The notes below the pieces were generated by a model. It did not search any database, was not told the DNA's origin, and worked only from the letters and a program-made list of their open reading frames with translations. Below are positions 30,167-64,000 of a stretch of 64,000 nt of DNA, piece by piece. The DNA is taken from the IMG/VR virus record IMGVR_UViG_3300046703_000335, positions 124,001 to 188,000 of that record; one strand, given 5' to 3'. Position 1 is the first letter of the stretch, and every line of letters starts with the position of its first letter. Both the position numbers and the translations under genes were made by a program.

Positions 30167-31177
30167 TTAATCATTCATTGCAGCTATAAGAAGTCCTTTT
30201 GCTACATCTCCAAGAGGATCACTAGCCATTCTTATTTCAGATATGCTAATAGGAAAATTATCACGTTCTTTTTCGAACTCTTGTTTGAAAAATTCAAGGA
30301 AATTTTTGGCTTTAGCAGTACCACCACTAATAATCCATGGGATCTGGTCAGGAAGTTCAATCTTTCCATTATCCTTTTTGAACTCTCTCTTTATGCTATC
30401 TACCACATAATGTATAAGATTCTTATAATAAACCACAATGGCTTCTCTTTCCCTAAGTTGTTTTGGATCACCTTCATTAGGATCAAGAAGATTTACACCT
30501 TTTTCCTTTATCGACATCAGACGTGTAGCAGTACTACCTACAGCTTTAGCTGCAGATTGATCAACCCAGTCACCACTACGTGAAACTGAAAATGACATAC
30601 CCACCATGGTCTGGAAAACCAAAGCTGTATTTACCATACCTGCACCAAAAGATGAAGCAAGAGCTGTAAAACCATCAGAACTTCCATTTGCATAAACAAT
30701 TGCAGCTGCTTCATTCATAGCAGTAGCTTTATAACCAAAAGACTCTATAATCTTTTGGAACATTGCTTGATGATAGATAATGTCCATATCTTTATCTATA
30801 GACTTCGCTGGTACAGAAAAGAATACTGACTCATTCTCAACTTTAGGAGAACTAAGAATATTTTTTAAAAGTATTACTAACATCCTCTCAGCATCATGTT
30901 CTCCAGAGGATATAACTCCCTGATTTAAAGGTCTTCTAGCTTCTCTTTTAAGAAGATTAGATACACTTAATGCAGGTTCTCCTACTATGTAAATAAAATC
31001 TTTTTCCTGCACGTAAGAAACATTTGACATCTTAAGCATATTCAAAATAGACTGGTCTGCTTCTACATCCAAAAATGCGTCCCGGATAGATTTTAGTTCT
31101 ACAGGTGCATTTTCATTTTTAATATCTTTTGTAGCACTTACCAAAAAACATGTCCCTATGTCAAGTCCAACTGCCAT
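30167..31177 (-). CDS. Actin-like (FtsA/MreB/ParM superfamily) ATPase
   Basis: Phosphate-1 GLDIGT, connect NEAAAIVY, phosphate-2 SFGAGMVN, adenosine ISGGTAK, terminal VAKG. Confidence 0.85.
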   Translation of the reverse strand: MAVGLDIGTCFLVSATKDIKNENAPVELKSIRDAFLDVEADQSILNMLKMSNVSYVQEKDFIYIVGEPALSVSNLLKREARRPLNQGVISSGEHDAERMLVILLKNILSSPKVENESVFFSVPAKSIDKDMDIIYHQAMFQKIIESFGYKATAMNEAAAIVYANGSSDGFTALASSFGAGMVNTALVFQTMVGMSFSVSRSGDWVDQSAAKAVGSTATRLMSIKEKGVNLLDPNEGDPKQLREREAIVVYYKNLIHYVVDSIKREFKKDNGKIELPDQIPWIISGGTAKAKNFLEFFKQEFEKERDNFPISISEIRMASDPLGDVAKGLLIAAMND

Positions 31178-37126: not shown

Positions 37127-37651
37127 TTAAAAATTTGGTATAACTAAACTTGGATCATTCATATCTCTCTGTATCTGCCAATAGGTAGGATCTAAACCAG
37201 TTATTATATTTGATAATTTTTTTAGCTCTTCTAAATTTTCTTTAAAAGCTACAGACATAATTACCGTCTCACATCTACCCTTAACTGCATTAAATAGCTT
37301 AATGGCGCTATCGTAAACTCCCTCACCACGATATGCATCATGATATTCTTTAGTACCATCAAAGCTAATTCCTATCCTATCAACATGGTCAGCTATCTCT
37401 GGTCTATAAAAAGTTCCATTAGTAGTAACTCCTACTTTAAACCCTTTACTTTTTAGTATATCACAAATATCCGCTAAATTTGATATAGTAAAAGGTTCAC
37501 CACCAGTAATGTACACCCATTCTATTTCACCAGCTTTTGATAATATTGTTTCCAAACTTTTATCAATATCTATTATTGCGGTACTCTTTGCACAACATCC
37601 GGCGCATGATAAATTACAAGCATACGTAATTGGGAAAAGTATATGATTCAT
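37127..37651 (-). CDS. Minimal radical SAM enzyme
   Basis: CNLSCAGC (CxxxCxxC), ITGGEP, TTNGT, ISFDG...HDAYRG. No SPASM/twitch extension. Confidence 0.9.
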   Translation of the reverse strand: MNHILFPITYACNLSCAGCCAKSTAIIDIDKSLETILSKAGEIEWVYITGGEPFTISNLADICDILKSKGFKVGVTTNGTFYRPEIADHVDRIGISFDGTKEYHDAYRGEGVYDSAIKLFNAVKGRCETVIMSVAFKENLEELKKLSNIITGLDPTYWQIQRDMNDPSLVIPNF

Positions 37652-38694: not shown

Positions 38695-40830
38695 ATGACA
38701 GCAGCACAAAAAGGTATTACTTTGCTTTTATGGTCTGAACAAGAAGATACACTACTCAAGGAGCTATATTTAAAAACACCTAAAGATATAATATTAACTA
38801 AGTTAAACAGAACTTGGAAATCTATAAGATATAGGGCTAGTAGACTAAAGTTTAAACGAGACCCATCCATTATAAAACAGGATAATATAGAAGGTACTAA
38901 AAAAGCTATGCTTGAAAAATATGGTGTAGAATACTCTACCCTTCTACCGGCTATGAAAGAAAAAAGTAGACAAACCAATTTGAAAAAAAGGGGAGTAGAG
39001 TATCCTTCACAATCCAAAGAAGTTCGTGACAAGATAAAATTAGTAGTAAATGAGAGATATGGTGTAGATAATGTATTTCAGGCACAGAAAATAAAAGAAA
39101 AATCTGAACAAACTATTTTAAAAAGATATGGAGTAAGATATATAAACCAAAGTCCAACTATTCGAGAGAAAACAAAAGAAACAAATCTTGAAAGATATGG
39201 AATATCAAATACTTTTCAATTAACAGATAGGGTCGAAAAAGGAATGATTGAAAAGTATGGACAAAGAGTCCCACTTAATGTCCCTGAAATTGCTGAAAAA
39301 AAGAAAAAAACGAGTTTAGAAAAATATGGTGTTGAAGTAGCTTCAAAAAATGAAGCTGTAAAAAGAAAATTATCAGAAACTTTAAAAACTGCTGTCGTTA
39401 GAGAAAAAAAATATCAAGCATTAAAGAAAAAAGGCTCTTTTAATTATTCTAATGAAGAGCTTGCATTCGCTAATTATTTATTAATAGCTGATCCAGACCT
39501 TAAAACTCATCAGCTTCATCCTATAACAAAACATGTGATAGATTACTATATGCCCAGATATGACTTATGGGTACAATATGACGGAACTTATTGGCACGGT
39601 AAGGGAGAAGCAGTGCATACTGGACCTCAAGCCATATCCATAGAGAAGATAAAAGCAAAAGATATCTATCAGAACGAAAATATTCCAAATTTAATAAGAT
39701 TCTGGTCAGATGATGTTAATGAAGCTATAAAAAAAGGCAGCATATTTACTCTTATTGAAATAAAAATAAAAGAAAAGATAAATACTACTGAGGATATATT
39801 TGTGTGCCACCAGTATCGAAAAAAAATAGAACATTATACTGAAGACCGAGACAATTTACCATTTAACCCAGATAATATCAAAGCATCAAATTTTACGCTT
39901 ATAAAGGAGGAACTATCAACAGAGATCGTAGAGTTTATAAAAAAATATGAATGGTTAGAAACTGTTGGAGTTAATCCTAAATGGTGTTTCACAGCTCGAT
40001 ACAATGATAAACTTGGAGGAGTAGTCCTAATAAATGAACCTACTGCTTATTCAAAAATGCTGGGTAAAGATACCCCCATCTATGAAGCCCTTATACAAAG
40101 AGGTGCTACAGCTTCCTGGACCCCTAAAAACCTCGGAAGCAGACTTGTTATGTTCTCTTGTAAGTGGATGGTAGCTAATACCCCAAAACGAATCTTTGTA
40201 GGTTATGCTGATCCTTCTGCTAAAGAACGCGGCATTATCTATCAAGCATGTAATTTTGATTATTTAGGGGATAATTTTGGGAATAGCTACCTATACAAGC
40301 ACCCTGAAATAAATCGAACATTTACATCCCAATATCTAAAAAGAACATCAACATTTAGACGCTGGTGTCTTCTTAATAAAATTGAACTGAGAAAAGAATG
40401 GTTTAAAGAAAATGGGTTTAAGAATTTGGAGATTATACCTCATGAAATTAAAAATATGTGGTATCTCTGGATAAAAGATATAATAAGCAGTGCAGAAAGA
40501 ATAACTATAAGTAAAAAGATGAAATATGCTATTCTACTCTATAGAGATAAAAAAGACAGAAAAATACTTGAACCTTTAAAAAAATATGACAAATTTCCAT
40601 ACAATAAAATTTATAACACAACAAACCAGCTAACTCTCCGACCACGCGGAAAAAACAATCATGGCTTAACAGCAGATAGAAAAAATCCAGAAAAAATTGA
40701 ATTTATATTAAAAAATCATAGCACTATGTCCAGGTCAGTTATGGCCCTAGAGTTGAATGAAACTCAACGATGGGTAAAAAGACAAGTAAATAAATTAGTA
40801 TCTGAGAATAAGATTAAGCCAAAGAGATAA
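38695..40830 (+). CDS. Multidomain protein: HTH + KYGV repeats + Vsr/DUF559-like endonuclease + Mom-like GNAT DNA-modification domain + HTH
   Basis: About seven (K/R)YGV-type repeats. DYYMPRYDLWVQYDGTYWHG nuclease motif. FIKKYEWL...RGA...KNLGSRL...VGYADPSAKERGIIYQACNFDYLG matches the Mom-family motif. On the opposite strand to its neighbours. Confidence 0.75.
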   Translation: MTAAQKGITLLLWSEQEDTLLKELYLKTPKDIILTKLNRTWKSIRYRASRLKFKRDPSIIKQDNIEGTKKAMLEKYGVEYSTLLPAMKEKSRQTNLKKRGVEYPSQSKEVRDKIKLVVNERYGVDNVFQAQKIKEKSEQTILKRYGVRYINQSPTIREKTKETNLERYGISNTFQLTDRVEKGMIEKYGQRVPLNVPEIAEKKKKTSLEKYGVEVASKNEAVKRKLSETLKTAVVREKKYQALKKKGSFNYSNEELAFANYLLIADPDLKTHQLHPITKHVIDYYMPRYDLWVQYDGTYWHGKGEAVHTGPQAISIEKIKAKDIYQNENIPNLIRFWSDDVNEAIKKGSIFTLIEIKIKEKINTTEDIFVCHQYRKKIEHYTEDRDNLPFNPDNIKASNFTLIKEELSTEIVEFIKKYEWLETVGVNPKWCFTARYNDKLGGVVLINEPTAYSKMLGKDTPIYEALIQRGATASWTPKNLGSRLVMFSCKWMVANTPKRIFVGYADPSAKERGIIYQACNFDYLGDNFGNSYLYKHPEINRTFTSQYLKRTSTFRRWCLLNKIELRKEWFKENGFKNLEIIPHEIKNMWYLWIKDIISSAERITISKKMKYAILLYRDKKDRKILEPLKKYDKFPYNKIYNTTNQLTLRPRGKNNHGLTADRKNPEKIEFILKNHSTMSRSVMALELNETQRWVKRQVNKLVSENKIKPKR

Positions 40831-44174: not shown

Positions 44175-47100
44175 TTATTTTATGCCAAATTCCTTAAGCC
44201 ATCCATCAGCTATTTTTCCCCAATTATACTCCTTCATCTTAGCATAAGCCCTATCAGCCCACATAAGCCTATAAGACTCATCAGAAAGCATCCTTATAGC
44301 TTCTGCTACGAATCTATTAACATATGAAGTGGGATATTCACCATTGCGACTTAATCCATCAGGAGAAAGAAGTATCCCTGCTGATCCTACAGTAGTTTGC
44401 AAACCGGCGAAGTCAGTACTTACAATAGAACACTTAGATAATCCTGCAGCAACTGCTGTTATACAAAATGTTTCACTGAACCAGCTCGGATACAACCAAA
44501 TCTTTGATTCTTTCTCATATTCAGCCAATTGCTTCTTACTCACTCGATCAACATACTTTACACCAGGCTGATTCATTAGATTTTTTATATCTGCTATAAA
44601 TTTCAGTCCCTCGACATCCTTCCGCATACGAGCCATGGATTCCCAATTAAAAAAGCCATAAGCTACGACAAGTTCAAAATCAGGGATCTCTTTTCTTATT
44701 TGAGGAACCATCTTTAAAAGCTGGTATAAACCTCTATCGGGGCTTGAAGAATAAACAGCTTGATTCTTCTTTTTATATTTGTCAACATCGCTATATAGAC
44801 TGAAATCCTGACCATTTGCAGTAAGGAACATCTTATCACTTATAATACCATGGTGACTCATAATAAATTCTTTATGCCACTCTGACAAATAAGCGTACTT
44901 ATCTACACGCCAAGTCATAATATCATAACTTTTATCTGGGGATAACCAAATATCATGAAATATGATATAGTTTCTTAAAGAATGAATATTTAATTTTAAT
45001 GGTTCCGTCGATCGTGACGCTATGAAATAATCAATAACATCATATTCTACATCAGCCTGCATCTTAGTATGATCACGATAAACAACATCCCCAACCTTTT
45101 CTCCGACATTATCAAAGACCGGATCAAGAACGATATCATCTTTACTGTCTGATAGTAAATCATTATAAATAGTGGTCTCAAAACCTTTTTTTACAAATTC
45201 CCGAGCAAGATATGATGCCCAAGTTTCTGATCCTGCCATACCCTCATCTACTTTTTGTTTATTCCAAGGCTCCCAAGCTGGACCTGTCCAAATTACTACT
45301 CGGGGTTTATTCCATTTTGCCCTATATTTCATATGATTTTCAGCATCTTCTTTATTATAAGATTCTCTATTCTCTTCCTGGTAGGCACCTCGGCTTATTC
45401 CGCCATAATGAAAAACAAAAGAATCTATAGCTTGACCTGTCACATATCCAAATTTTGATAATCGATTCATAAGGTCAAGATCTTCGCACCCATTAAGGAA
45501 GAGAGGATCAAATAAGCTTACTTCATTTATTGCACAGCGAGCAAAAATAGTAGCGTATGCTGCCACCCATCCCTGACGGACAAAAACATCCTTATGCTTT
45601 TTGTTAGAATACTCCATGAATTTATAGAGTTCTTCCACATAAGGTTTAATCTCATCAATTTTCATAGCTGGGTGAAGATCAATCTTTGATTTTTCTAAGA
45701 GCATCGAATAAGATGGTTTACCTGGAGCGTCATGCAACCAGCCTCTGTCACAATTAGACAATACCCCACAAGAAGCTAATCGATCAACAGTCTCCATTTT
45801 ATTTACAAGGCTAGTAAGCCAGCACTTTGACACTATAACATCTGAATTCAAAATTACAAAATATTTTGTATTAGAAGCTTTAATACCTGCGTTACAAGTC
45901 TCAGAAAAAGATAAGCGCTTATTTGGGTCACCTATAACAGTAATTCCTTTTAATGTCAGCAAGTAATCCCATGTCTCTTTATTACTACCTCCATCTGAGA
46001 TAATGATGTGGAAAGGGTATAGGGTATTCATGAGAATAGAGCTTACACACATCTTAAGATATTCAACGTTATTATAGTTAGCAATAATGATATCTACTAT
46101 GGATCTATTTTTTACATCTATCTTTTCGGGAGGATCCGGAAATTTCATCTGATTATTAATAAGCTCTGTTAAAGTGCTAATCCACTGACTAGCAATAACT
46201 GGTAGACTATACTCTCCTATAGAAGCTTTTCCAGCTTCTCCTATCTTCTTTCTCACGGTACTATCTTTCAACTTTATGAGAGCATTTTTCCACTCTTCTT
46301 TAGTATCACATATAAAACCGTTTTCTCCATCCTTGATAATTTCTTTGTATGCCTGAAGTGGAGAACAAAGAACTGGGAGACCAAGAGCCATTGCTACAGT
46401 AGCTTTCACAGAACTCTTTGCTGGTTGAACCTCAACACGTTGAGGGCACAATACCACATCACAGGCATTCATTACATCGACCCAGCCTTCCTCTGTCCAG
46501 CGATGAGTAGCATTATCCCATTCTGTACATAATACTATTTCATAACCTGCTTCTTCAATTGTATCTTTTAGATATTCATTTACAAGCCAGGAATTTCCAC
46601 CCATACCCACATAAACTGCCTTAGGCTTTAGATATCGATTTTCATATACTGCTTTATCAGATGTTTTCTCCACTGCATCCTTAAGGACTACTGTCTTCAT
46701 AAAACCATGTTCATTAGTAATCTCTTTAAGCTTGGTAGAACAGCAGGTGATAAGATCAACCTCTTCCATACATTCCCGTTCAAACGGAAAATTGAATAAA
46801 GCCTCACAATGATCAAAGACACATTTTATATCTGAGGATTTAAGATGCTTCATTATTTCAAGATCTTCTTTACCAAACTGAGTAAAAATAGCTACAGTTG
46901 CATCTCCTACCTTGTTTCTTGTTTCATAGATATTATTACCGTAGTAATTAGAAATGATTGTGCTATCAATACCCATATCTACCAGTTGCTGGCAGATATT
47001 AAACCTTCTTAATCGGATAGAAGGATTCGTTAGATCAAGTGTGGGAATAAACCACACTATTTTAATATCGCGAATTTTATTCAATCTTATGTCACAAAAA

Positions 47101-48296
47101 TCGAGGTTATTCCGGAGAACACTCATATTAAGATCATTTTTCTGCAAAAATTCTTTTAATTTAGAAATGTCTTCTTCCTGGAGCACCATTCCTTTTGACA
47201 AACGATTCATTTCGATATTCGTAATCTTAAGAAGTTCGCTCATCTGTTCATTACCGGGTTTATGCGTAAGAGCAAGTGTACAATATTTTACTACACTGTC
47301 ATATTCTTTTCTGTTGTAATAAATAAGAGCCAGTTTAGCTGCTGGAATAAATCCATAATAGTCAATTATCTGAGACATTCCTCCTTCAAGCTTTTTATTA
47401 AGAGCTTCTTTATAATATGATACTGCGGTGTCTGTATCATTCTCTTGCTCAAAGATATTTCCAAGAACCACGTAATTCTCAGCATAAATGCTATTGAATC
47501 TAATACCTTTTAGTGCATAATTTTTTGATGAGGAATAATCAGATTTTTCAAAATAGTATCTTGATAATTTTATACATGCTGTAGTAAGATTATCCGCAAA
47601 ATCAGCCCCCTTTTTTATATACGGATCAAGTACCGATATTGCTTTTTCCCACATTCCAAAATCAGCCAGTTCTTTACCATAATAAAATTTTATTCGCTCT
47701 GAACAATCTCCCGTTTCATATACTTTTTTGAGAGCCTCTATATTGCGAGCGGGATTATGTACTCTAACCCTATAATGATCAATATTGATATTTTCCCGAT
47801 GTAATCTATTGGGGGGGACATCCAAATTCATATACTCGTGTATGGGGTCATGCCATTTTATATGCTCACAATTTTTTACTATTCTTTCTCTAGGGAGAAT
47901 TAGTACTGGAGCATCCTTCTCATCATGGCTATATACGTAGTTAAGAATTATAATATCCCAAGCACTTATCTTTGGCTTCAATACCTGCAGTCTCATATAC
48001 TCTGAAGGCCTCAAAACATCGTCAGAGTCTAACCACATGATATATTGAGATGTATTATTACTAAAAGAGAAGTTTCTCGCAGCTGAGAAATCAGAAATCC
48101 ATTTAAAGAAAAATGTCTTAGCACCATAACTTTCAGCTAAAGACTTTATCTCTGGGTCCTCTTTTTCCATAGCAAGAGTTATTACTATCTCGTCAAATAG
48201 TTCACCTTGACAACTTTTAAGACATCTATCTAAAACATCCTTATCATCAGGACCTACAATAATATTCAAACCCAATAAAGGGGTGCGTATACTCAT
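44175..48296 (-). CDS. Multi-domain glycosyltransferase (GT2-TPR-GT4-GT2-GT4)
   Basis: GT2 #1: DFSAARNFSF, WLDSDD, PIHE. TPRs. GT-B #1: KSSVKATVAMALGLPVL. GT2 #2: DIIIANYN, ILNSDVIV, EDLDL. GT-B #2: YSSSPDRGL, YPSWFSETFCITA. Confidence 0.9.
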   Translation of the reverse strand: MSIRTPLLGLNIIVGPDDKDVLDRCLKSCQGELFDEIVITLAMEKEDPEIKSLAESYGAKTFFFKWISDFSAARNFSFSNNTSQYIMWLDSDDVLRPSEYMRLQVLKPKISAWDIIILNYVYSHDEKDAPVLILPRERIVKNCEHIKWHDPIHEYMNLDVPPNRLHRENINIDHYRVRVHNPARNIEALKKVYETGDCSERIKFYYGKELADFGMWEKAISVLDPYIKKGADFADNLTTACIKLSRYYFEKSDYSSSKNYALKGIRFNSIYAENYVVLGNIFEQENDTDTAVSYYKEALNKKLEGGMSQIIDYYGFIPAAKLALIYYNRKEYDSVVKYCTLALTHKPGNEQMSELLKITNIEMNRLSKGMVLQEEDISKLKEFLQKNDLNMSVLRNNLDFCDIRLNKIRDIKIVWFIPTLDLTNPSIRLRRFNICQQLVDMGIDSTIISNYYGNNIYETRNKVGDATVAIFTQFGKEDLEIMKHLKSSDIKCVFDHCEALFNFPFERECMEEVDLITCCSTKLKEITNEHGFMKTVVLKDAVEKTSDKAVYENRYLKPKAVYVGMGGNSWLVNEYLKDTIEEAGYEIVLCTEWDNATHRWTEEGWVDVMNACDVVLCPQRVEVQPAKSSVKATVAMALGLPVLCSPLQAYKEIIKDGENGFICDTKEEWKNALIKLKDSTVRKKIGEAGKASIGEYSLPVIASQWISTLTELINNQMKFPDPPEKIDVKNRSIVDIIIANYNNVEYLKMCVSSILMNTLYPFHIIISDGGSNKETWDYLLTLKGITVIGDPNKRLSFSETCNAGIKASNTKYFVILNSDVIVSKCWLTSLVNKMETVDRLASCGVLSNCDRGWLHDAPGKPSYSMLLEKSKIDLHPAMKIDEIKPYVEELYKFMEYSNKKHKDVFVRQGWVAAYATIFARCAINEVSLFDPLFLNGCEDLDLMNRLSKFGYVTGQAIDSFVFHYGGISRGAYQEENRESYNKEDAENHMKYRAKWNKPRVVIWTGPAWEPWNKQKVDEGMAGSETWASYLAREFVKKGFETTIYNDLLSDSKDDIVLDPVFDNVGEKVGDVVYRDHTKMQADVEYDVIDYFIASRSTEPLKLNIHSLRNYIIFHDIWLSPDKSYDIMTWRVDKYAYLSEWHKEFIMSHHGIISDKMFLTANGQDFSLYSDVDKYKKKNQAVYSSSPDRGLYQLLKMVPQIRKEIPDFELVVAYGFFNWESMARMRKDVEGLKFIADIKNLMNQPGVKYVDRVSKKQLAEYEKESKIWLYPSWFSETFCITAVAAGLSKCSIVSTDFAGLQTTVGSAGILLSPDGLSRNGEYPTSYVNRFVAEAIRMLSDESYRLMWADRAYAKMKEYNWGKIADGWLKEFGIK

Positions 48297-48564: not shown

Positions 48565-49017
48565 TTATACTGCGGCTTCTTTAGCAGCTTTCCACTTCCT
48601 GTCATCGATACCGGAGATCTTTGAAATATTTTTTTCTTGAGTAATGAGAGGTTCATATGATTTAGTACTCAAACCAGCTTCTGAGGCTAATTTACTAGCA
48701 TCTGACCAAGATTCTGTCTCTACCCCTGCAACATTGGGTTTTAATTTAGTCCCACCTGAACCATAGCGTTCGATTTGGCGAATTTCAAGTTCAGTATTCT
48801 GCTTCCTTTTATCCCGACTGATCTTATACGTCTGAGCCTCTGTCCATTGCTTGAAAAAAAATCCACCATTTAAATTTAGAGATATCAGGCGTTCCATCTT
48901 TACTTCCTTATGACCCTCTTCACATCGAGGGCATAAGATATCGGGGGTTTCTTTAATGGAATGAATAACTTCTTGTATCAAGCTACAGCTATTACATCTG
49001 TACTCGTAGGTAGGCAT
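48565..49017 (-). CDS. FmdB-family zinc-ribbon protein
   Basis: MPTYEYRCNSC...CPRC...MERLIS. Confidence 0.8.
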   Translation of the reverse strand: MPTYEYRCNSCSLIQEVIHSIKETPDILCPRCEEGHKEVKMERLISLNLNGGFFFKQWTEAQTYKISRDKRKQNTELEIRQIERYGSGGTKLKPNVAGVETESWSDASKLASEAGLSTKSYEPLITQEKNISKISGIDDRKWKAAKEAAV

Positions 49018-52244: not shown

Positions 52245-53525
52245 TTATATATTCAATGGTAACTTTTTTTCATTATCCCTATCTTTACCATTAGAAAATA
52301 CTATATTATTTACTTTAAACGTCTTACCTTTAAAAGTCTCATCCCCTATAAAATTGTCCATGGAATCTTTTTTAACATATGCTATAGTAACATGGGGATT
52401 GTATGTCGGGAATGTGCTTTCATTTTTTATCTTTTTTACGAGATTATAATACAATTTCTCAAGATCTCCAGATTCTACTTCAATCTTAAGAACATCATAT
52501 TCTTTTTTATCCTTAAATGCATTAATCAAACCAAGGCGTACTTCAAAAGGTTTAATTTCTCCAATAATCTTTGCAGTCCTTATAGGAGAATCATCTGTAA
52601 TCCCATAAAGCACTGTTACATGAATATCATCCTCTCGACCTTTTGAATTATCCCCTTCTACATATAATTTATTACCTGGTACATTATCCTTACCCCATTT
52701 TATAATTGACTTAGATAAGGCATCCGGTAAATTGATTTTAGTACACGAATACTCATACTTCACTCCGGTTTTTGCAACTTTTGTACGTACATCAACGTAG
52801 GTACTAGAAGGAACATCATAAGTGAAGATAATTGATTCTGGATTGCGATTAGAAAATGTTTTTTTTACATGTTCAATATCTTTATAATTCTTAAGAAATG
52901 CCAAAGAGTTATCCGGATCAGAGAGACTTTTAATACTAAATGTGTTAAATCCTGTAGTAGCTTCACCATACTTTGGAATTCTTATAGTCTTACCAGAGAA
53001 AATATCATTCACTACTTTTGGGATGGAATCCGTATCCAGGCGTTCAAATTTAAAATCTATAGCCCTTGAGGTACCTTTATCTGGAGATACGAAAGGCATA
53101 GCCATTTTTGAAAGTGTATTCGCGCACTTTCTTATTTTTGAGCTAATACTTTTCAAATTTTTTTCCTTTAGTTTATTTAAAAACTTTTTTACACTGTCGA
53201 TACTGTCAAATTCCTTGACTATGCCACTACGCCTACCTATAAGTTCAAGAAATTTCTTTTCCCTATCTGATTGGTTACCGCCATTATAGAAAATAACATA
53301 ATCTGAATTTATCATCCCAGCTATTTCTTTATAAGTATTCTTTGCTGGATCATAATTATTATCAAAAGGGTCTAATAGGTATAAGTCTCCTCCAAACTCT
53401 TTCTCGATTTCTTTACGCCAACTGTTATTCTGACAGTCTCCACCAAGAAAAATAACAGGGGTACCAGATTTTGGAGCGTTAACAATATCTTTATCAGATA
53501 AATAGGATGTAATTAAACGAATCAT
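52245..53525 (-). CDS. Nucleoside-2-deoxyribosyltransferase-like domain fused to an Acb1/gp57B-like 2H phosphoesterase
   Basis: N-terminal IFLGG...SWR...DPF...E...SDYVIFY. C-terminal YEYSC...GREDDIHVTVLYG...YNPHVTIAY (two HxT motifs). Confidence 0.75.
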   Translation of the reverse strand: MIRLITSYLSDKDIVNAPKSGTPVIFLGGDCQNNSWRKEIEKEFGGDLYLLDPFDNNYDPAKNTYKEIAGMINSDYVIFYNGGNQSDREKKFLELIGRRSGIVKEFDSIDSVKKFLNKLKEKNLKSISSKIRKCANTLSKMAMPFVSPDKGTSRAIDFKFERLDTDSIPKVVNDIFSGKTIRIPKYGEATTGFNTFSIKSLSDPDNSLAFLKNYKDIEHVKKTFSNRNPESIIFTYDVPSSTYVDVRTKVAKTGVKYEYSCTKINLPDALSKSIIKWGKDNVPGNKLYVEGDNSKGREDDIHVTVLYGITDDSPIRTAKIIGEIKPFEVRLGLINAFKDKKEYDVLKIEVESGDLEKLYYNLVKKIKNESTFPTYNPHVTIAYVKKDSMDNFIGDETFKGKTFKVNNIVFSNGKDRDNEKKLPLNI

Positions 53526-53995: not shown

Positions 53996-54580
53996 TTACT
54001 CTGAAACTGCTTTTGTATATTCATCCATAGCAATTTTTAATTTTTTCACTAATAAAGTATATCCTCGCTTTTTCAAACAATCCTTAATATATGATAGTCT
54101 CTCAGCTGGATAACGTACTTCATCTATCTTTTTTGAAGAAATATTACGGGATGCTTCTTTACTTTTTGCATATTCTATTAAAGGTCTCATCTGTGCTTTT
54201 ACATCAGGAGTAGCTTTATTATATGGACCAATCAAACGCTCTTCTCTCATAGCCCCTGTTTCAACCATATCCTCAATTTCTTTTTTAGGAACTAATCTCT
54301 TACCATCCCACATCATCAACTCTTCTTTACCAGTAGAAGAATTCAGTTCAATAACAAATTCTCCCTTTTCATACGGTTTGATATTAGGATCAGTAGGCTC
54401 ATGAAAAGTTTTACCAGGTGTTCTATCACTCAATAATCGTGGACTATGCTTGGTTTCCCCAAAAAAAGGATACCCAGTAAGAGTCGCTTCCTTAATAGCT
54501 TTTAGCTCAGAAGCTTCTTTACTAAAACCACGTTCATTAAGAATATCAGAAATCTTATTTAGTCTACTTAAGATACTCAT
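53996..54580 (-). CDS. Probable internal head protein
   Basis: N-terminus RLNKISDILNERGFSKEASEL, shared with 55398..56156. KEA sites. Confidence 0.55.
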   Translation of the reverse strand: MSILSRLNKISDILNERGFSKEASELKAIKEATLTGYPFFGETKHSPRLLSDRTPGKTFHEPTDPNIKPYEKGEFVIELNSSTGKEELMMWDGKRLVPKKEIEDMVETGAMREERLIGPYNKATPDVKAQMRPLIEYAKSKEASRNISSKKIDEVRYPAERLSYIKDCLKKRGYTLLVKKLKIAMDEYTKAVSE

Positions 54581-55296
54581 TATTTACCACCTTTAAGATA
54601 TTTCTTTAAAAGCTTATCAAAATACGCTATTTTATCCTTTGGTAAGTAGCTTTTAGCTCCTCCAAGATAATATGAAAAGCTATCCGCCCAATCCTCCCAA
54701 GGGGATCTTTTTGCATAGAATCTTGTGAATCTAGCATATGGTGAATAATAATAATCTCCTATTACTTCAGGAGTACCTTTTTCATTAATATGTATTCTTT
54801 TAAGTCCTGGTTTTGGATATTTTGACCAACCAGATAATTCCTGCCAATCTTTTTTAAGAGATAGATCCCCATCTTCTCCCTGTGCTTCATCCCACCCATG
54901 ACCAAGCTCATGATAAAGAGTTTGATCAAATTTATTTATTATAGACCCATTATCAGGATCTATAATTAACTTGGGGTCATTAAGCAATTGATCATTCATG
55001 ATAAGAGTATTATTAACATATTTACCATGATTCGGATAGTATTCCTTGGAGGGACCTAAGTCATCAAATGATAAAGATTTTATACCACACATCTTTACAA
55101 TTTCTGGAGATATTCTCTGAAGGCTACTATATAATGCCTGGATACACTCAGGATTAGTTTTTCTATCTACATTAATACCATAAATTTCTTTGATACCAGA
55201 AAACAAATCAGAGTTACGACTATGTTCTTCTAAATCAGCCGCAATTCTCCGTAGACGAAAAATAAGTTCTATTGGTGTACTTTTTATAGTCATCAT
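54580..55296 (-). CDS. Zincin-type metallopeptidase
   Basis: YHELGHGWD (HExxH) and downstream YA..SPWEDWADSF. Confidence 0.75.
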   Translation of the reverse strand: MMTIKSTPIELIFRLRRIAADLEEHSRNSDLFSGIKEIYGINVDRKTNPECIQALYSSLQRISPEIVKMCGIKSLSFDDLGPSKEYYPNHGKYVNNTLIMNDQLLNDPKLIIDPDNGSIINKFDQTLYHELGHGWDEAQGEDGDLSLKKDWQELSGWSKYPKPGLKRIHINEKGTPEVIGDYYYSPYARFTRFYAKRSPWEDWADSFSYYLGGAKSYLPKDKIAYFDKLLKKYLKGGK

Positions 55297-56883: not shown

Positions 56884-59466
56884 TTACATAAACTCTTTTA
56901 AGAATCTTCCATGATCAGCAGCAATAGGAGCTACTTTGAAAAGTTCTTCTTTTAGCGAAGCATATTTCTTACCAGCATTAAACAATCGCTTCATCTTAAG
57001 AGTATAATTATTTCCTCGAATCTTCCCATACTCATAGAAGGACAGAGCTTTATTCTGTGCGAGGCATTCTTTAAAATACTCTGACACTATTATAGTAGGA
57101 GTCTCAGCCTGATATTGTGGTATCATCCCACAGGCTTCTATAAACTTATTCCAACTACCATAATAGTGCTCAATAACATGTGAGGGTGCCCCCAAAATTG
57201 ATTTTTCACGATAGGTCTCTCGAGACATCCCTAATTTTAAGCTAACTTCTTTAAACTTATTCTGGATTGTATTCTCGTCAAAAGATACCGAAAAAGCTCT
57301 TTTATTTACTTCATGTGGAGCATCAGTGCACTTTATAATATTATCATAACTGTTTTTTAAGTTAACCCAGTTAATCGAGTCCTTAACATGTCTGGAAAAC
57401 AACAAGATAACTTCATAACTGTCTGAGGTAGTCACATGCTTAAAAGGTATTCTCAACACTTTAAATAACTTATACCCTAAATTACTACATGTGTTTATTG
57501 ATCTTTCAATAAGGGGAACTTTTTGGTTGGGGCTATAACAGACACCGAATACTCCATCCTCCCTCAAGGATTTAATACAACCTTTTACAGTAGCATCCCA
57601 ATACTGAGTCAACCAATCGGAAAGTTCTGGAAATCTATTGATACTTTGAGATTCTTCATTAGAATAGCTTTCATAATCAAAGTATGGTGGTGATGAAAAT
57701 GCTAATCCAAAATAATTCGTGTAAGGGATATCAACTTCAGAGCCCTTATTGTGTACACAATAATTTCCCCCTAAGTTAGCTTTTACAAATGCTCCGAAAT
57801 TTAATAGATTTTCATATGTTATAGTATTAGGCTCAAAACCTACATACTCCATACCTAAAGACATTGCTGCCAGCATCCTTGAACCAAAACCAGCAGAATA
57901 ATCTAATACCTTACCATTTTTACAAAAGTTGGCATATATATACCTAGCTATTGAGGGCTTAAAGTTACTTACAACAGTATTCATTAACTTTAGCCCTTTA
58001 CGCATTGAAGAATCATTTATTCTATCTGCGTACCTCAACCTATTCTCTACTAACTTTTTAAAAAAAGTCTCATCAACCCATACATCTATAGGTGCTGGAT
58101 AACCTTTACGTTTACTGCTATATATATTCGGAAAAAACTTCTCGCATAATTCCATCCCAGAGGTGTTAAAGCTTAAGAGATCGCCATCACATGTTGAAAT
58201 CCCGTTGTCTTTAAAGCTCCTTAACAAATAAAGAGCCCTACTGTCTGATATGTCTGAAAATGGAAAAGGTTTCCCCCAATATTGCTCAAAAGTCATATTA
58301 AACATCCGGGCCTTCATAACATCATTACCTACCCTATAAAATTTAGGATGTACCATTAATGGGGTTAAGGTATTAACCTTATCGGGGATTAAGAACTCTT
58401 CAGGTATCTTATATAGGACATCCGGAGTGGCTACTTGATATACAATATCAAAAAATTCCTTATAAAATTTTTTAGAAAAACTTATCCCACTTTTATAAAG
58501 CTGAAAACCCCACCCCAACTTATTCTCTAAAAAATCAACAAAAGCACTTAGTTGTTCCTTTATAGGGCAATAATTATTAATTATAAGAAATCGAGAATCA
58601 TCATCGTAATAACCATCATCTATAAACCAATAGGCCAATATTCTTTCATCCCAGTACTCTGAAATTAAGTCTATTGGAATTAGCTTACCTTCAACACCCT
58701 CTTTATAAAAAGATTCTCTAAACTTTGAGAAATGTTCACTCTGAATTGTTGCAAAACGTAACCCTGTTCCGTTATCACAGGGGTAGCAATTAGTGGAATA
58801 AGGTTCTAAAAGTTTATGTTTTAAACGAAGGTACTGCTCTTGTTTTAATGAGTGACTCTCATAATATCTTGGAGAAGAATCTATTCCACCATCCCCAAGT
58901 AGACCACCAATAATTAAGACAATCTGATTATGTGTTAAAGGAGGAGACTGCTTCTGTGTTTTTAATAAAATCCCTTTATCTTGTATTATAGGTCTCCAAG
59001 TAGTTTTTGAAACACCATATTTAGAAGAAAATTCTTCTTGTGTTAATTCATAATAATCTTTTTCAAGAACTTCTTTTGGAGTCTGTATGACTCTTTCTTT
59101 TTGTATATCATTAACTTTTATAGATATCCCAAGATTCAATTTCTTCCTTCTATATGCTACACCCTCTCCAGACATCTTAAAAAGTTTGCCAATATTTGAA
59201 TCTGTTTTTCCTTCAGCGTGCAAGGTTCTCAAGATATCATCAGTGAGTTTATTCTTAAGATCTTTTCGTATACCCTCATACACCACAGTAATTTTCGAGT
59301 TATATGCCCCTCTACTATCCGAAGTAATACCATAGGTTTTCATTCGCTTAAAGATTGCATCTTCTGAGACACCAAAAATTCCACCTATAGCTTTTGCAGT
59401 AAAACCAAAATCGCAATATAGCCTTTTTATGGATTCCATATTTAATTCTTCGATAGTATACTGCAT
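56884..59466 (-). CDS. HTH repeats + LAGLIDADG endonuclease + amino-DNA methyltransferase (N4C/N6A) fusion
   Basis: LAGLIDADG motifs IIGGLLGDGG and LAYWFIDDG. MTase motifs VLDYSAGFGSRM and FSSPPYF. C-terminal YYGSWNKFIEACG (homing-endonuclease-associated repeat). Confidence 0.85.
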   Translation of the reverse strand: MQYTIEELNMESIKRLYCDFGFTAKAIGGIFGVSEDAIFKRMKTYGITSDSRGAYNSKITVVYEGIRKDLKNKLTDDILRTLHAEGKTDSNIGKLFKMSGEGVAYRRKKLNLGISIKVNDIQKERVIQTPKEVLEKDYYELTQEEFSSKYGVSKTTWRPIIQDKGILLKTQKQSPPLTHNQIVLIIGGLLGDGGIDSSPRYYESHSLKQEQYLRLKHKLLEPYSTNCYPCDNGTGLRFATIQSEHFSKFRESFYKEGVEGKLIPIDLISEYWDERILAYWFIDDGYYDDDSRFLIINNYCPIKEQLSAFVDFLENKLGWGFQLYKSGISFSKKFYKEFFDIVYQVATPDVLYKIPEEFLIPDKVNTLTPLMVHPKFYRVGNDVMKARMFNMTFEQYWGKPFPFSDISDSRALYLLRSFKDNGISTCDGDLLSFNTSGMELCEKFFPNIYSSKRKGYPAPIDVWVDETFFKKLVENRLRYADRINDSSMRKGLKLMNTVVSNFKPSIARYIYANFCKNGKVLDYSAGFGSRMLAAMSLGMEYVGFEPNTITYENLLNFGAFVKANLGGNYCVHNKGSEVDIPYTNYFGLAFSSPPYFDYESYSNEESQSINRFPELSDWLTQYWDATVKGCIKSLREDGVFGVCYSPNQKVPLIERSINTCSNLGYKLFKVLRIPFKHVTTSDSYEVILLFSRHVKDSINWVNLKNSYDNIIKCTDAPHEVNKRAFSVSFDENTIQNKFKEVSLKLGMSRETYREKSILGAPSHVIEHYYGSWNKFIEACGMIPQYQAETPTIIVSEYFKECLAQNKALSFYEYGKIRGNNYTLKMKRLFNAGKKYASLKEELFKVAPIAADHGRFLKEFM

Positions 59467-59650: not shown

Positions 59651-61660
59651 TTAGCGAGCTATCTTAACCCTTGTAATTGCCAATGGGTTATGGCACCCAA
59701 TACCTAAATTTTCGAAGACTGAAAATCCTATTCTTCTTGCCTTTGGATCATCAGCAGATAGTACTGTAAGTTCGGTACGTACAGGAATGCGCCCGAAAAA
59801 TTCTGGTTCTGCGCAAACATAAGCATAACCAGGATTAACTTTTCTGCTGACGATGATCTGAGCACCCCAAACGGTACCAAGTAGACCACTCTTAAGCAAT
59901 GTCCCTTGAGTTTCAATATCAAGAACGTCTCTTCCCCATTTTCTTAAATCTGCAAAGTCAAGAGCGTTCATGAAAATACGAGCAACTCGAAGATCATGAG
60001 TCTCAATACGTGCAAAAGCGTCAATCAAGTTTGCAGGTGTAAGAGGAGCAACAGCATTGATCTGTGCGTTTACATATGCACTTCCAAGATTGTCAAAACC
60101 AAACTGAGAAACTGCATCCATAACATCAAAGGCACGTGCATCTTCAGCAGCTTGAATTTGAGCTTTTGCCAAATCCTGTGCGCGTTCGATAAGGTCAAAA
60201 CGACGTTCTTTGATCTGTGTCAAAGGCAGTTCAGGATTCGATGCTATTTCGAAAAGAGGGAATATCACACGGCGAGGTTTTGTGATCGCCAGAATGTTTT
60301 CACCTTCTTCTCCGACAACGAAAGCAGTGACGTTAGGATCTTTGTCGTAAATTGGCAGCGCACCATCAGGGAGCTGTTCTACGAGAAAAGCCTTACGTGC
60401 AACTGACGTATAATCTCTGCGAAGACGCAGAGGCTGGATCCACTTTGTTACTACCCTATTTAAGGGCGTATGAGTCTTTCAACTCATATCTCATGGTTAC
60501 CCATGAGTTCAGACTGTATCACTACCTGTTATATACAGGTACTCGGCATGTCTTGACAAATTACTCTGTCAAGGTAGGTCTTATCGCCATTACCAAAACT
60601 TGGTATTAGGCTTCCCTCAGTCGTTGAACCTTCAATGGGGTTTCCCCCAAAGCTTGGCTGCTGATTGTCCTTTGAACGATATCTCTTAGGTAACTTATAG
60701 ATCAAATCATTAGTAATATTATCACGGATATACTCATAAGCAGTATCTCTTGATTCCTTCAAAACCCTAATATGGCATTCACCATCAGAGTTCTCAGTAA
60801 CACTTACAACCAGGTTTAAAACATCCTTAAAGATATCTATAACCAGTTCTTTGTTGTTTTTGAAAAAGCTATCATAAGACACTATAGTAAACCCGTAATC
60901 ACCAACCGCCCCATCATCCATCCACCAAAAAGACAACCCTACACCAGTAAGTTCACTTAGTAGTTCAGCACTCAGTACCTTTGTACCTTCAGGATAAAAC
61001 TTTTTTCTTAACTCTGTAAATTGATGCAAGGCATAACTCCTTGCATCAACATATGAAAAAAGTTCTCCACCGGATATAAAAGCTCTTTCACCATAAAATA
61101 CTTTAGCAGTAAAAAGGCTTCATTATCTCTGCTTTTCTAAGCAATAGTTGCTCTTGTTTCACACTATGCCTACAAAGCCAATATCCAGTCCCAGATGATT
61201 GTACTGCAATGCAGGAATCCCCAAACAAACTCCCATGCAGAAATTCTTTCTGATAGCTATTTAACGGAACCAATCTTAATGCGTTACGATTCAAATGATA
61301 GCCCTTATTTGTACTAATACCATAGATACTTCTTAAGGTACAAACTACTCTATCAGTTAAACCATATTTTTCACCTATCTCAATATCGCATAAACCAGCA
61401 TTGATGTACTCTTCAACAAGCACATCTTCCGGCAAAACACTTATAAGTCTTGCCAGTTTCTCTTCGCTGATTATTACGTTATTGATCTTCATACCTACCC
61501 ATCGTTCAAAGGATGTTCCAGACAATTTACCGAGTTTTACGTCCACCATCCAGAATCAATTAATGGACGCCGCTAACTTTGCACGGCCAGAAGCAGTCTT
61601 AATGTAATCTCCAATGATCTGTTGTTTCAGTTCATTAGTGATTGTGTTTGTTCCTTCCAT
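59651..61660 (-). CDS. Major capsid protein (HK97 fold), spliced: exon 1 61660-61563 joined to exon 2 60440-59651, 295 aa
   Basis: AGGAGG RBS. Exon 1 MEGTNTITNELKQQIIGDYIKTASGRAKLAAS + AT|G joins in frame to IQPLRLRRDYTSVARKAFLVEQLPDGALPIYD...GEEGE...IGFSVFENLGIGCHNPLAITRVKI. Follows the scaffold and decoration genes. Confidence 0.9.
60441..61562 (-). mobile_element. Group I intron (1122 nt) in the major capsid gene
   Basis: 5' exon ends in U (GTCCAT) pairing with IGS GTGGAC. IGS CTGGAT pairs with 3' exon ATCCAG (P10). P AAATTGTCTGGAA, Q AATCAGCAG, R TTCAACGACT, S GATACAGTCT. P3 ACTCGGT/GCCGAGT. Terminal omega-G. Confidence 0.93.
60529..61492 (-). pseudogene. Intron-encoded LAGLIDADG homing endonuclease with a 1-nt frameshift
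   Basis: LHGSLFGDS lies in 61103..61549 and LSFWWMDDG in 60529..61029. Removing one T from the T5 run at 61111-61115 gives a continuous 320-aa ORF (...MKPFTAKVFYGERAF...ALHQFTELRKKFY...). Confidence 0.8.
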
Positions 61661-63544: not shown

Positions 63545-64000
63545 TTACTCTTCAAATTGAGATAAAATCTTAGCCCATGAAGCTAACTTTTTACACTCTC
63601 TCTGACTTGGCTTGCGACCTATCTCAACTATCATCTTTGTGAAAAAGGGCACCATTCCTGTTGATCCAAGTTTGACTCTGGATAAAGTCTTAACTGCATC
63701 TGTACCAACAGGGATATTAGAAGCATTCTTATCTATAAAGTGCAATATCCCTAAAACATCATCACGAGTGTACCCATACTTTTTAAATTGTTTCCAATTC
63801 TTAGTATTAGATAAAATCATAATACCATTGTACAGCCGATCATTTTTTGTATCTCTTGCAGAAGCTAAAATCTTTTTAAAACTAGCGGACTTGTTCACTA
63901 AGTTATCATTTGTAGAAGTCTCTTCATCCGAAGGACGTCCACTATCTCCGCCATCTTGCTTAGCCTGATCCTTCATGATCTCTCTACGAATCTGATTAAG
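63545..64000 (-). CDS. C-terminal part of a head-morphogenesis protein (possibly the prohead protease), 5'-truncated
   Basis: Frame open to the window edge (LNQIRREIMKD...). Identity inferred only from its position upstream of the scaffold. Confidence 0.45.
   Translation of the reverse strand, partial: LNQIRREIMKDQAKQDGGDSGRPSDEETSTNDNLVNKSASFKKILASARDTKNDRLYNGIMILSNTKNWKQFKKYGYTRDDVLGILHFIDKNASNIPVGTDAVKTLSRVKLGSTGMVPFFTKMIVEIGRKPSQRECKKLASWAKILSQFEE

What the first reader, a model, noticed from the sequence alone, without database searches (positions are those of the whole stretch)
52245..53525. NDT-like + Acb1-like fusion: putative dual anti-signalling polyprotein
Seen: residues ~24-120 resemble nucleoside-2-deoxyribosyltransferase-like domains. 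Residues ~255-426 form a 2H phosphoesterase with gp57B/Acb1-like context. KMA (140-142) and KVA (249-251) sites separate three modules. Known: T4 Acb1 degrades CBASS cyclic oligonucleotides. Inference: a virion-delivered, protease-processed polyprotein that destroys more than one class of immune nucleotide from the moment of injection.
Basis: partly seen in the sequence, partly recalled or inferred. Interest (0 to 1): 0.72.

Follow-up and report, generated by a model that had tools for sequence, protein, structure and literature searches.

The report
Three-module NDT-like/2H phage enzyme
A huge phage from peat encodes, inside its head-gene block, a 426-residue protein that strings together a nucleotide-glycosidase-like domain, a small unnamed module and an intact Acb1/LigT-type phosphodiesterase; it is probably a counter-defence enzyme, but the claimed protease cutting and virion delivery are not shown.

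Summary
The ORF is real (window 52245-53525, minus strand, 426 aa) and the three-module reading holds. The N module (11-120) is a divergent PF15891/NDT-like domain, supported by sequence and fold. The M module (143-246) matches no described family. It also occurs alone and inside ART/cREC polyvalent proteins. The C module (258-426) is a 2H phosphoesterase with both HxT motifs invariant. By sequence profile it is closest to Acb1/PDE-9. By structure it is closest to ThpR/LigT cyclic phosphodiesterases. About 75 relatives show every module order, and each module also occurs alone. The gene lies in a conserved late block: terminase, portal, protease-like gene, intron-split capsid gene, target, tail sheath. 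In other phages the same 2H type is fused to a portal or a head-maturation protease, so virion association is plausible but unproven. The KMA and KVA "sites" are conserved and lie in flexible linkers. However, the same motifs form the native N-termini of stand-alone M and 2H proteins, and site 2 sits where PDE-9 has its N-terminal lid. Protease processing is therefore unsupported. The substrates (immune cyclic nucleotides versus RNA 2',3'-cyclic ends) are undecided. Verdict: a new variant of a known kind, of moderate interest.

The parts
52245..53525 (-). Whole ORF, 426 aa (P0001), N-M-C three-module protein
53166..53495 (-). N module, residues 11-120: DrHyd/NDT-like (PF15891-type) Rossmannoid domain. 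Invariant R37, D52, E67, E89, with D55 near-invariant
   Evidence: Pfam sub-threshold in 29/30 members. Stand-alone PF15891 homologs at E 1e-33 to 1e-49. The top 7 structural matches are all NDT superfamily, Z 7.6-9.4. Invariant residues:
53100..53165 (-).
   Evidence: Conserved. Low pLDDT over 133-142. The same helix ends stand-alone N proteins, begins stand-alone M protein P0076 and precedes 2H-only proteins P0040 and P0051
52788..53099 (-). M module, residues 143-246: alpha/beta module with no match in Pfam, PHROGs, NCBIfam or PDB sequences. Begins A-x-P; invariant D174, G178, P184, Y236
   Evidence: Profile search: 58 hits, including stand-alone 92-141 aa proteins and fusions to cREC+ART-PolyVal, cREC, LigD 3'-phosphoesterase and 2H
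52755..52787 (-).
   Evidence: K249 near-invariant and A251 invariant. pLDDT <50 over 248-254. Stand-alone viral 2H cluster aligns from residue 247. PDE-9 chain 16-165 aligns to 258-414, so its lid (residues 1-15) falls on roughly 243-257
52248..52754 (-). C module, residues 258-426: 2H phosphoesterase core. HxT motifs at 52614-52622 (H302-V-T304) and 52386-52394 (H378-V-T380)
   Evidence: Pfam PF13563 and PF23474 hit all 31 of 31 C domains aligned in A3. PDB profile: 9q2g 'Acb1'/PDE-9 at E 1.9e-7. Structure: Z 15.4 to drCPDase, 14.7 to ThpR, 11.3 to FBB1 Acb1
59651..61654 (-). Context: major capsid gene, split into exon 1 (about 61654-61562) and exon 2 (60478-59651) by an insert of about 1.1 kb carrying LAGLIDADG ORFs
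   Evidence: phrog_2522 major head protein E 3e-37. tblastn of the L006 capsid protein. LAGLIDADG_2. Rfam Intron_gpI 29.3 bits, below the gathering score of 50
63545..64000 (-). Context: 3' end of a 950-aa intein-bearing gene with a head-maturation-protease match (the rest lies beyond the window)
   Evidence: phrog_18299 E 5e-7 over residues 534-664, plus intein Pfam hits

Best explanation
The gene encodes one polypeptide of three mobile modules joined by flexible linkers. The modules are an NDT/DrHyd-like nucleotide-binding, probably N-glycosidase, domain; a small accessory module (M) of unknown role; and a catalytically intact 2H phosphoesterase. It belongs to the 'polyvalent/Swiss-army-knife' network of phage counter-defence domains. 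It is co-transcribed with head and tail genes of a peat huge phage. The most likely mechanism is inferred, not shown. The 2H domain would hydrolyse a phosphodiester through a 2',3'-cyclic-phosphate intermediate on a host-made nucleotide signal (Acb1/PDE-9-like), or on the cyclic-phosphate product of such chemistry. The NDT-like domain would attack an N-glycosidic bond of a nucleotide or NAD/ADPr-derived molecule. The modules act additively rather than as an obligate pair, because related phages at the same locus carry N-M-C, N-C or M-C. The conserved K-x-A motifs are best read as the native N-terminal edges of the M and 2H modules. For the 2H module this segment would be a lid like that of PDE-9. 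They are not demonstrated protease sites. Shown: the architecture, the intact motifs, the folds, the modularity and the head-module position. Inferred: the substrates, the counter-defence role and the timing. Unknown: whether the protein is packaged or cut.
For: Architecture and conservation. N fold and family. 2H: HxT motifs invariant. Acb1 and the generic 2H model hit all 31 of 31 C domains aligned in A3. The best PDB profile match is PDE-9/'Acb1' 9q2g at E 1.9e-7, against 1e-3 for LigT-like proteins. PDE-9 and T4 Acb1 degrade CBASS signals. Iyer et al. 2017 found that polyvalent and solo phage 2H domains never associate with RNA ligases, and predicted signal degradation. Modularity: orders N-M-C, N-C, M-N-C, M-C and N-M, and each module alone. 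The syntenic loci L002/L004 (N-M-C), L006 (N-C) and L007 (M-C) confirm this at one locus. Polyvalent link: M in cREC+ART-PolyVal proteins; 2H fused to GNAT+C39 peptidase, to a portal and to a head protease. Late/structural context. Lid reading of site 2. Site 1 as the native M N-terminus.
Against: The structural neighbours rank cellular ThpR/LigT/drCPDase first (Z 13.5-15.4) and Acb1/PDE-9 lower (Z 10.4-11.3). One stand-alone N gene sits among a ligase, a LigD 3'-phosphoesterase and an RRM protein. M's other partners (cREC, LigD-PE) are RNA/DNA-end enzymes. Two structural groups of viral 2H PDEs had no activity on any of 18 messengers. P0001's own PF15891 score is far below the cut-off. E89 could not be superposed residue by residue on the NDT nucleophile. 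No expression, proteomic or biochemical data exist, and the phage is uncultured.
Confidence: 0.5

Rival explanations
1. RNA (or nucleic-acid) end-healing enzyme. The 2H domain is a ThpR/LigT-type 2',3'-cyclic phosphodiesterase that repairs phage or host RNAs cut by metal-independent defence RNases (anticodon nucleases, HEPN or Csm6-type effectors). The N and M modules assist substrate handling.
For: The top structural matches are drCPDase, ThpR, PH0099 and YjcG (Z 13.5-15.4). M is fused to LigD 3'-phosphoesterase and to cREC cyclic-phosphate domains. Stand-alone N protein P0129 lies next to an ATP-dependent ligase, a LigD_N protein and an RRM protein. PHROG 755 is labelled 'RNA ligase'.
Against: The ThpR equivalog model TIGR02258 scores 29-32 bits against a cut-off of 65.7. 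The PDB profile prefers PDE-9/Acb1 by four orders of magnitude in E-value. No ligase, kinase, LigD-PE or cREC lies near the gene or anywhere in the 210 kb record, apart from one weak PF09414 hit 130 kb away. The conserved neighbours are head-block genes. Iyer et al. report no RNA-ligase linkage for this kind of phage 2H.
Confidence: 0.25
2. The protein is packed into the capsid and cut by the prohead protease after K-x-A (at about 142 and 251) into three enzymes, which are injected with the DNA and destroy several immune nucleotides at once.
For: Both motifs are conserved and lie in low-pLDDT linkers. A K-x-A(S) also precedes the N module where something lies upstream. The gene sits in the head module, near a protease-like gene. 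The 2H domain is fused to portal and head protease in other phages, and an assemblin-type protease fusion is listed by Doherty et al.. Polyvalent proteins are predicted to be packaged.
Against: The same motifs open stand-alone M and 2H proteins and sit at residues 3-9 of M-first proteins, where there is nothing to release. In P0044 the motif is at residue 4. Site 2 coincides with a known functional lid position. The K-x-A count in the protein is near chance (3 against 1.7). Conserved K-x-A is not enriched in neighbouring head-block proteins. The protease's specificity is unknown and no S78/S77 Pfam hit was found. There are no proteomic data.
Confidence: 0.12
3. Nucleotide-pool or DNA-modification enzyme. 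The NDT-like domain works like DNPH1, MilB or BlsM (a (d)NMP N-hydrolase) or as a base-exchanging transferase for the phage's modified DNA, and the 2H domain has an accessory metabolic role.
For: The closest folds include DNPH1, MilB, BlsM and deoxyribosyltransferases. The window also encodes a Mom-like modification protein, a radical-SAM protein and a 1373-aa multi-glycosyltransferase.
Against: The gene is not adjacent to nucleotide-metabolism genes. The N module is dispensable at this locus in a related phage (L007). The fusion partners are conflict-type domains. PF15891 relatives are mostly viral stand-alone genes of unknown role.
Confidence: 0.08

Closest known systems
Phage 2H phosphodiesterases Acb1 (T4 gp57B, FBB1; PDB 7T26/7T27) and PDE-9 of Burkholderia phage BCSR5 (PDB 9Q2G/9Q2Y)
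   Same: 2H fold with two HxT motifs. Pfam Acb1 hit at threshold in all family members. Best PDB profile match, and PDE-9 has the highest identity among structural matches (21%). A conserved, poorly modelled segment lies N-terminal to the core, where PDE-9 has its lid.
   Different: The core is about 170 aa rather than 140-165 aa, and it is structurally nearer to ThpR/LigT. It is fused to two further modules. It sits in a head block, not among early genes. No activity data exist.
ThpR/LigT-type RNA 2',3'-cyclic phosphodiesterases (4QAK, 5H7F, 1VGJ)
   Same: Highest structural similarity (Z 14.2-15.4 over about 155 residues). Same size class.
   Different: 13-14% identity. The TIGR02258 equivalog cut-off is missed by a wide margin. 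The profile E-value is 1e-3 against 1.9e-7 for PDE-9. The protein is viral, multi-module and has no ligase partner.
Polyvalent proteins of phages and conjugative elements (Iyer, Burroughs, Anand, de Souza, Aravind 2017, PMC5512222)
   Same: Several conflict-type enzymatic modules in one chain. The 2H domain is of the kind seen fused to portal/MuF. The M module is shared with ART-PolyVal/cREC giants. The gene is encoded with virion genes.
   Different: Only three modules. This protein has no peptidase or MuF/portal anchor (the relative P0060 does). The NDT-like + 2H combination is not mentioned in the parts of the papers read.
NDT/DrHyd superfamily: PF15891 Nuc_deoxyri_tr2, YtoQ (8OF6), nucleoside 2-deoxyribosyltransferases, DNPH1, MilB/BlsM
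   Same: Rossmannoid fold with top structural matches. The invariant acidic residue E89 follows strand 4, where these enzymes carry their nucleophile (inferred).
   Different: Shorter (about 105 aa against 135-160 aa). 10-19% identity. The protein's own Pfam score is below the cut-off. The oligomeric active-site elements of NDTs were not assessed.

Membership tests
2H phosphoesterase superfamily (PF13563 clan) | Two H-x-T/S-x motifs | tested here: met
   H302-V-T304 and H378-V-T380 are invariant in 33 sequences
2H phosphoesterase superfamily (PF13563 clan) | Pfam gathering score and 2H fold | tested here: met
   PF13563 scores 30.9-33.4 bits against 27. Z is up to 15.4 to solved 2H enzymes
Acb1 (PF23474, anti-CBASS nuclease) | Pfam gathering score | tested here: met
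   27.2 bits (whole protein) and 29.3 bits (domain alone) against a cut-off of 27. All 31 of 31 C domains aligned in A3 hit, best E 1.7e-8. The pass is marginal, and the generic 2H model scores higher
Acb1 (PF23474, anti-CBASS nuclease) | Compact core of about 150 aa with a short C-terminal lid (Hobbs et al. 2022) | tested here: inconclusive
   The core is about 170 aa. Structural Z is 11.3 to FBB1 Acb1 against 15.4 to drCPDase. The conserved flexible segment is N-terminal, as in PDE-9
Acb1 (PF23474, anti-CBASS nuclease) | Cleaves 3'3'-cGAMP/cA3 3' of adenosine and rescues phage from CBASS | not testable with these tools
   Needs biochemistry and infection assays
ThpR/LigT RNA 2',3'-cyclic phosphodiesterase (TIGR02258 equivalog) | NCBIfam equivalog cut-off | tested here: not met
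   29.4-31.9 bits against 65.7
PF15891 Nuc_deoxyri_tr2 / NDT (DrHyd) superfamily | Pfam gathering score on this protein | tested here: not met
   14-16.8 bits against 30. The best score seen among family members scanned individually was 27.7 bits (P0043)
PF15891 Nuc_deoxyri_tr2 / NDT (DrHyd) superfamily | Homology by consistent and transitive evidence | tested here: met
   29 of 30 members hit only this family. Stand-alone homologs at E 1e-33 to 1e-49 carry PF15891. 69 of 100 Atlas feature hits are PF15891 clusters
PF15891 Nuc_deoxyri_tr2 / NDT (DrHyd) superfamily | NDT-type Rossmannoid fold | tested here: met
   The top 7 VIA matches are all NDT superfamily, Z 7.6-9.4 over about 100 residues. 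Foldseek's five best-ranked chains (MilB, YtoQ, PTD) are all NDT-superfamily with prob 0.97-1.0, but E is only 0.017-0.04
PF15891 Nuc_deoxyri_tr2 / NDT (DrHyd) superfamily | Catalytic glutamate nucleophile after strand 4 | tested here: inconclusive
   E89 is invariant in fused and stand-alone forms and lies 9 residues after strand 76-80. No residue-level superposition was available
Polyvalent proteins (Iyer et al. 2017) | Two or more conflict-type domains in one chain, shared with recognised polyvalent proteins | tested here: met
   Three modules. M occurs in ART-PolyVal+cREC proteins, and 2H with GNAT+C39 peptidase
Polyvalent proteins (Iyer et al. 2017) | Packaging into the virion, via a portal/MuF anchor or proteomic proof | not testable with these tools
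   Only context is available: the head block and anchors in relatives P0075, P0061 and P0062
Prohead-protease-processed capsid cargo | The motif is a cleavage signal, so it should be absent where nothing needs to be released | tested here: not met
   The motif is present at the N-termini of stand-alone M and 2H proteins and of M-first proteins
Prohead-protease-processed capsid cargo | The motif is shared with other substrates of the same protease | tested here: inconclusive
   Only 3 of 34 conserved K-x-Z tripeptides in neighbouring proteins are K-x-A. The capsid protein's processing state is unknown

The most novel reading that the evidence does not exclude
The connector helix ([CS]-[IV]-S-x-x-[IL]-[RK]-K-x-A-x-x-L) and the K-x-A edge motifs recur at the termini of three unrelated modules, whether these are fused or encoded separately. 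They could be a cargo-loading and release signal, analogous to T4 capsid-targeting sequences or encapsulin targeting peptides. Huge phages would use it to load interchangeable anti-defence enzymes (NDT-like, M, 2H) into the capsid for injection. Other phages would reach the same end by fusing the 2H domain to the portal or the head protease.
Probability: 0.12. Interest if true: 0.8.

Novelty: new variant of a known kind. Interest (0 to 1): 0.5.

Why it matters
Viral 2H phosphodiesterases are a proven way to erase CBASS, type III CRISPR and 2-5A signals. Their substrate range tracks subtle differences in the core. This family adds a widespread, uncharacterised architecture in which such a PDE is tethered to an NDT/DrHyd-like domain and to a module matching no described family. 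That module also appears in giant ART/cREC polyvalent proteins. If the N domain degrades a second signal class (NAD/ADPr-derived, or the bases of nucleotide messengers), this would be a single-chain, multi-target immune-evasion enzyme. If the protein is really packaged, it would extend 'pre-loaded' counter-defence to huge phages. The M module and the connector helix are concrete new handles for experiments. As it stands, the finding is a well-supported annotation with an open mechanism.

Tried and rejected
1. Megablast of the locus against deposited phages found no match. tblastn found only the 2H part.
2. PDB sequence-profile searches for N and M gave nothing usable. The M 'hits' were designed coiled coils matching the helix.
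3. The ESM Atlas feature search for M gave no usable hit.
4. Pfam S78/S77 prohead-protease models found nothing in the 210 kb record. Only a PHROG-level protease hit turned up, in the 950-aa intein-bearing gene.
5. A test for a block-wide K-x-A protease motif was negative.
6. An HMM of the connector helix against all ORFs of the record gave best non-self E-values of 0.02 and 0.044. Both are in head-module proteins. The shuffled control gave 0.2, so the result is not significant.
7. The alternative middle module of P0054-56 looked CYTH-like by eye (REKEKR), but neither Pfam nor NCBIfam supports this, so the idea was dropped.
8. The ORF upstream of the LR756511 2H gene is not an M module.
9. The N-terminal MPxPxxY..CMH..QAxAxCxxxW module of P0028, P0031 and P0051 matched no PHROG or Pfam family.
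10. The record has no LigD_N, ATP-dependent ligase (PF01068) or cREC gene.
Full report
**What is there.** The finding's coordinates match an ORF on the minus strand (52245-53525, 426 aa, P0001). The window is part of a 210,408-bp IMG/VR virus record that CheckV estimates to be about 45% complete. The record uses the standard genetic code and is 94% coding, almost all on one strand. It encodes a tail sheath. Near-identical DNA recurs in peat metagenomes from several studies. The source is therefore an uncultured huge myophage.

**Family.** About 75 relatives were found, many full-length (413-492 aa), on contigs of up to 373 kb. Their alignment shows three modules. The AlphaFold model (mean pLDDT 80.5, pTM 0.44) has three confident domains. 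They are separated by the only internal low-confidence stretches, 123-126/133-142 and 248-254.

**N module (11-120).**
- P0001's own PF15891 score is sub-threshold (14-16.8 bits against 30).
- However, 29 of 30 family members hit PF15891 and nothing else consistently.
- 69 of 100 Atlas feature hits are viral PF15891 clusters.
- A profile search finds stand-alone proteins of 110-240 aa at E 1e-33 to 1e-49, most carrying PF15891.
- The N-only model (pTM 0.77) has NDT-superfamily enzymes as its top seven structural matches (Z 7.6-9.4). TIR and generic Rossmann folds rank below them.
- R37, D52, E67 and E89 are invariant, and D55 nearly so, in both fused and stand-alone forms.
- E89 lies after strand 4, where NDT, DNPH1 and MilB carry their nucleophile. 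This placement is an inference, because no residue-level superposition was available.

**C module (258-426).**
- Both HxT motifs are invariant.
- All 31 C domains hit the generic 2H model (best E 1e-14) and Acb1 (best E 1.7e-8). LigT_PEase hits 19 of them.
- Against PDB sequences, the family profile matches 9Q2G/9Q2Y best (E 1.9e-7), ahead of LigT-like PH0099 (1e-3) and FBB1 Acb1 (2e-3).
- 9Q2G is PDE-9 of Doherty et al. (bioRxiv 10.1101/2025.08.21.671373). PDE-9 is a group-3 enzyme, like T4 Acb1. It degrades 3'3'-cGAMP, spares 2'3'-c-di-AMP, and has an N-terminal lid.
- By structure the order reverses: drCPDase, ThpR, PH0099 and YjcG score Z 13.5-15.4, while FBB1 Acb1 scores 11.3, MHV ns2 11.2 and PDE-9 10.4.
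- The ThpR equivalog model is missed by a wide margin.
- The domain is thus a bona fide, probably active 2H enzyme. Its subfamily, and hence its substrate, cannot be fixed computationally.

**M module (143-246).**
- It has no match in Pfam, PHROGs, NCBIfam, PDB sequences or the Atlas.
- An exhaustive profile search found 58 relatives. They include many stand-alone proteins of 92-141 aa and several fusions.
- The fusion partners are cREC + ART-PolyVal (1748 aa), cREC (1159 aa), LigD 3'-phosphoesterase, and 2H with or without PF15891.
- M therefore belongs to the domain network of polyvalent proteins (Iyer et al. 2017, PMC5512222). All of its partners perform cyclic- or 3'-phosphate chemistry.

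**Modularity.**
- The module orders seen are N-M-C, N-C, M-N-C, M-C and N-M, and each module also occurs alone.
- At the same syntenic locus, related phages carry N-M-C (L002, L004), N-C (L006) or M-C (L007).
- The modules therefore look additive rather than obligately coupled.

**Context.**
- Reading along the minus strand, the order is as follows:
  1. terminase (intein-bearing);
  2. a 1355-aa unknown;
  3. portal (phrog_16240, E 6e-31);
  4. a 950-aa intein-bearing gene with a head-maturation-protease hit (E 5e-7);
  5. two unknowns;
  6. the major capsid gene (phrog_2522, E 3e-37), split by a group-I-like insert;
  7. seven ORFs (six on the same strand);
  8. the target;
  9. unknowns and glycosyltransferases;
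  10. an actin-like gene;
  11. the tail sheath.
- The target's start codon overlaps the stop of the preceding gene.
- In other phages, the same 2H type is fused to a portal (P0075) or a head-maturation protease (P0061, phrog_80 E 6e-12). It also occupies the protease/scaffold slot between the portal and capsid genes (P0062).
- Doherty et al. list an assemblin-type protease fusion.
- BFVD neighbours include actinophage 'capsid morphogenesis' and 'structural' proteins.
- Virion association is thus plausible by position and by analogy, but it is not shown.

**The K-x-A 'sites'.**
- They are conserved and lie in flexible linkers.
- However, the count in the protein (3) is close to the compositional expectation of 1.7.
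- Stand-alone M proteins begin MxKx[AST]xP[HW], and P0076 even keeps the connector helix.
- The M-first proteins P0042 and P0045 carry A-x-P within their first 10 residues.
- In P0044 the K-x-A-S that precedes N is at residue 4.
- The nearest Atlas cluster consists of stand-alone viral 2H proteins and aligns from residue 247.
- PDE-9 residues 16-165 align to 258-414. This places its functional lid (residues 1-15) on RTKVAKTGVKY. Doherty et al. note that such lids are typically modelled with low confidence.
- Neighbouring proteins show no excess of conserved K-x-A.
- The motifs are therefore best read as module edges, and for the 2H domain as a lid. Cleavage is not excluded, but nothing favours it.

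**An unexplained element.** The connector helix occurs at the C-terminus of stand-alone N proteins, at the N-terminus of a stand-alone M protein, and before 2H-only proteins. A search for it in other proteins of the record was not significant. Its recurrence across unrelated modules is the basis of the novel case.

**Rivals.**
- RNA-end healing is favoured by the structural ranking, by M's partners, and by one stand-alone N gene that sits beside a ligase, a LigD-PE protein and an RRM protein.
- It is disfavoured by the lack of any ligase linkage at this locus or in the record and by the sequence-profile preference for PDE-9/Acb1.
- A metabolic or DNA-modification role is weakly possible.

**Novelty.** Multi-domain viral 2H PDEs and polyvalent proteins are already described. 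The NDT-like + M + 2H architecture, the M module itself and the connector helix are not mentioned in the papers read. The finding is therefore a new variant of a known kind.

Noticed in passing
window 59651-61654 (-): The major capsid gene is interrupted. Residues 3-31 of the L006 ortholog map to 61648-61562 and residues 19-293 to 60478-59654. About 1.1 kb lies between them, carrying a LAGLIDADG_2 ORF (60529-61029) and a 148-aa ORF. Rfam Intron_gpI matches 60490-60748 at 29.3 bits, below the gathering score of 50.
   Followed up: partly
window 30167-31177 (-): An actin-like 'Volactin' homolog (PF25216, 209 bits) lies in a conserved block just upstream of the tail sheath. The same block (299 aa, 223 aa, Volactin, about 480 aa, Zn-ribbon, sheath) recurs in L012, L013 and L019.
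   Followed up: partly
L008 (G000 187001-207000) and window 63545-64000: The terminase, the portal and the protease-like 950-aa gene each carry an intein with a LAGLIDADG domain. The record is unusually rich in inteins and homing endonucleases (see also window 28686-30044, 38695-40830 and 56884-59466).
   Followed up: partly
window 1-9111 (-), continuing to G000 122906: A giant ORF of about 3401 aa. It was not examined.
   Followed up: no
window 44175-48296 (-): A 1373-aa protein with several glycosyltransferase domains, conserved downstream of the target block in all related loci. A small RHH protein and a Zn-ribbon_8 protein precede it.
   Followed up: no
window 38695-40830 (+) and 37127-37651 (-): A Mom-like DNA-modification domain fused to homing-endonuclease repeats, on the opposite strand. 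Nearby is a QueE-like radical-SAM fragment. Together these hint at modified DNA.
   Followed up: no
window 48565-49017 and 26672-27151 (-): Two paralogous Zn_ribbon_8/FmdB-like small proteins, one after the target block and one before the tail sheath. Both are conserved in related loci.
   Followed up: no
P0028, P0031, P0051 (relatives, N-termini): A further conserved N-terminal module of about 45 aa (MPxPxxY..YMxxCMH..QAxAxCxxxW) precedes the N or 2H modules. It has no Pfam or PHROG match.
   Followed up: partly
P0054-P0056 (relatives, residues about 128-290): A different module of about 150 aa replaces M between the NDT-like and 2H domains. No family match was found.
   Followed up: partly
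window 54580-55296 (-): A conserved 238-aa neighbour with weak zinc-metallopeptidase hits (Peptidase_Mx E 0.0065, residues 189-211). It lies four genes upstream of the target and was not pursued.
   Followed up: no
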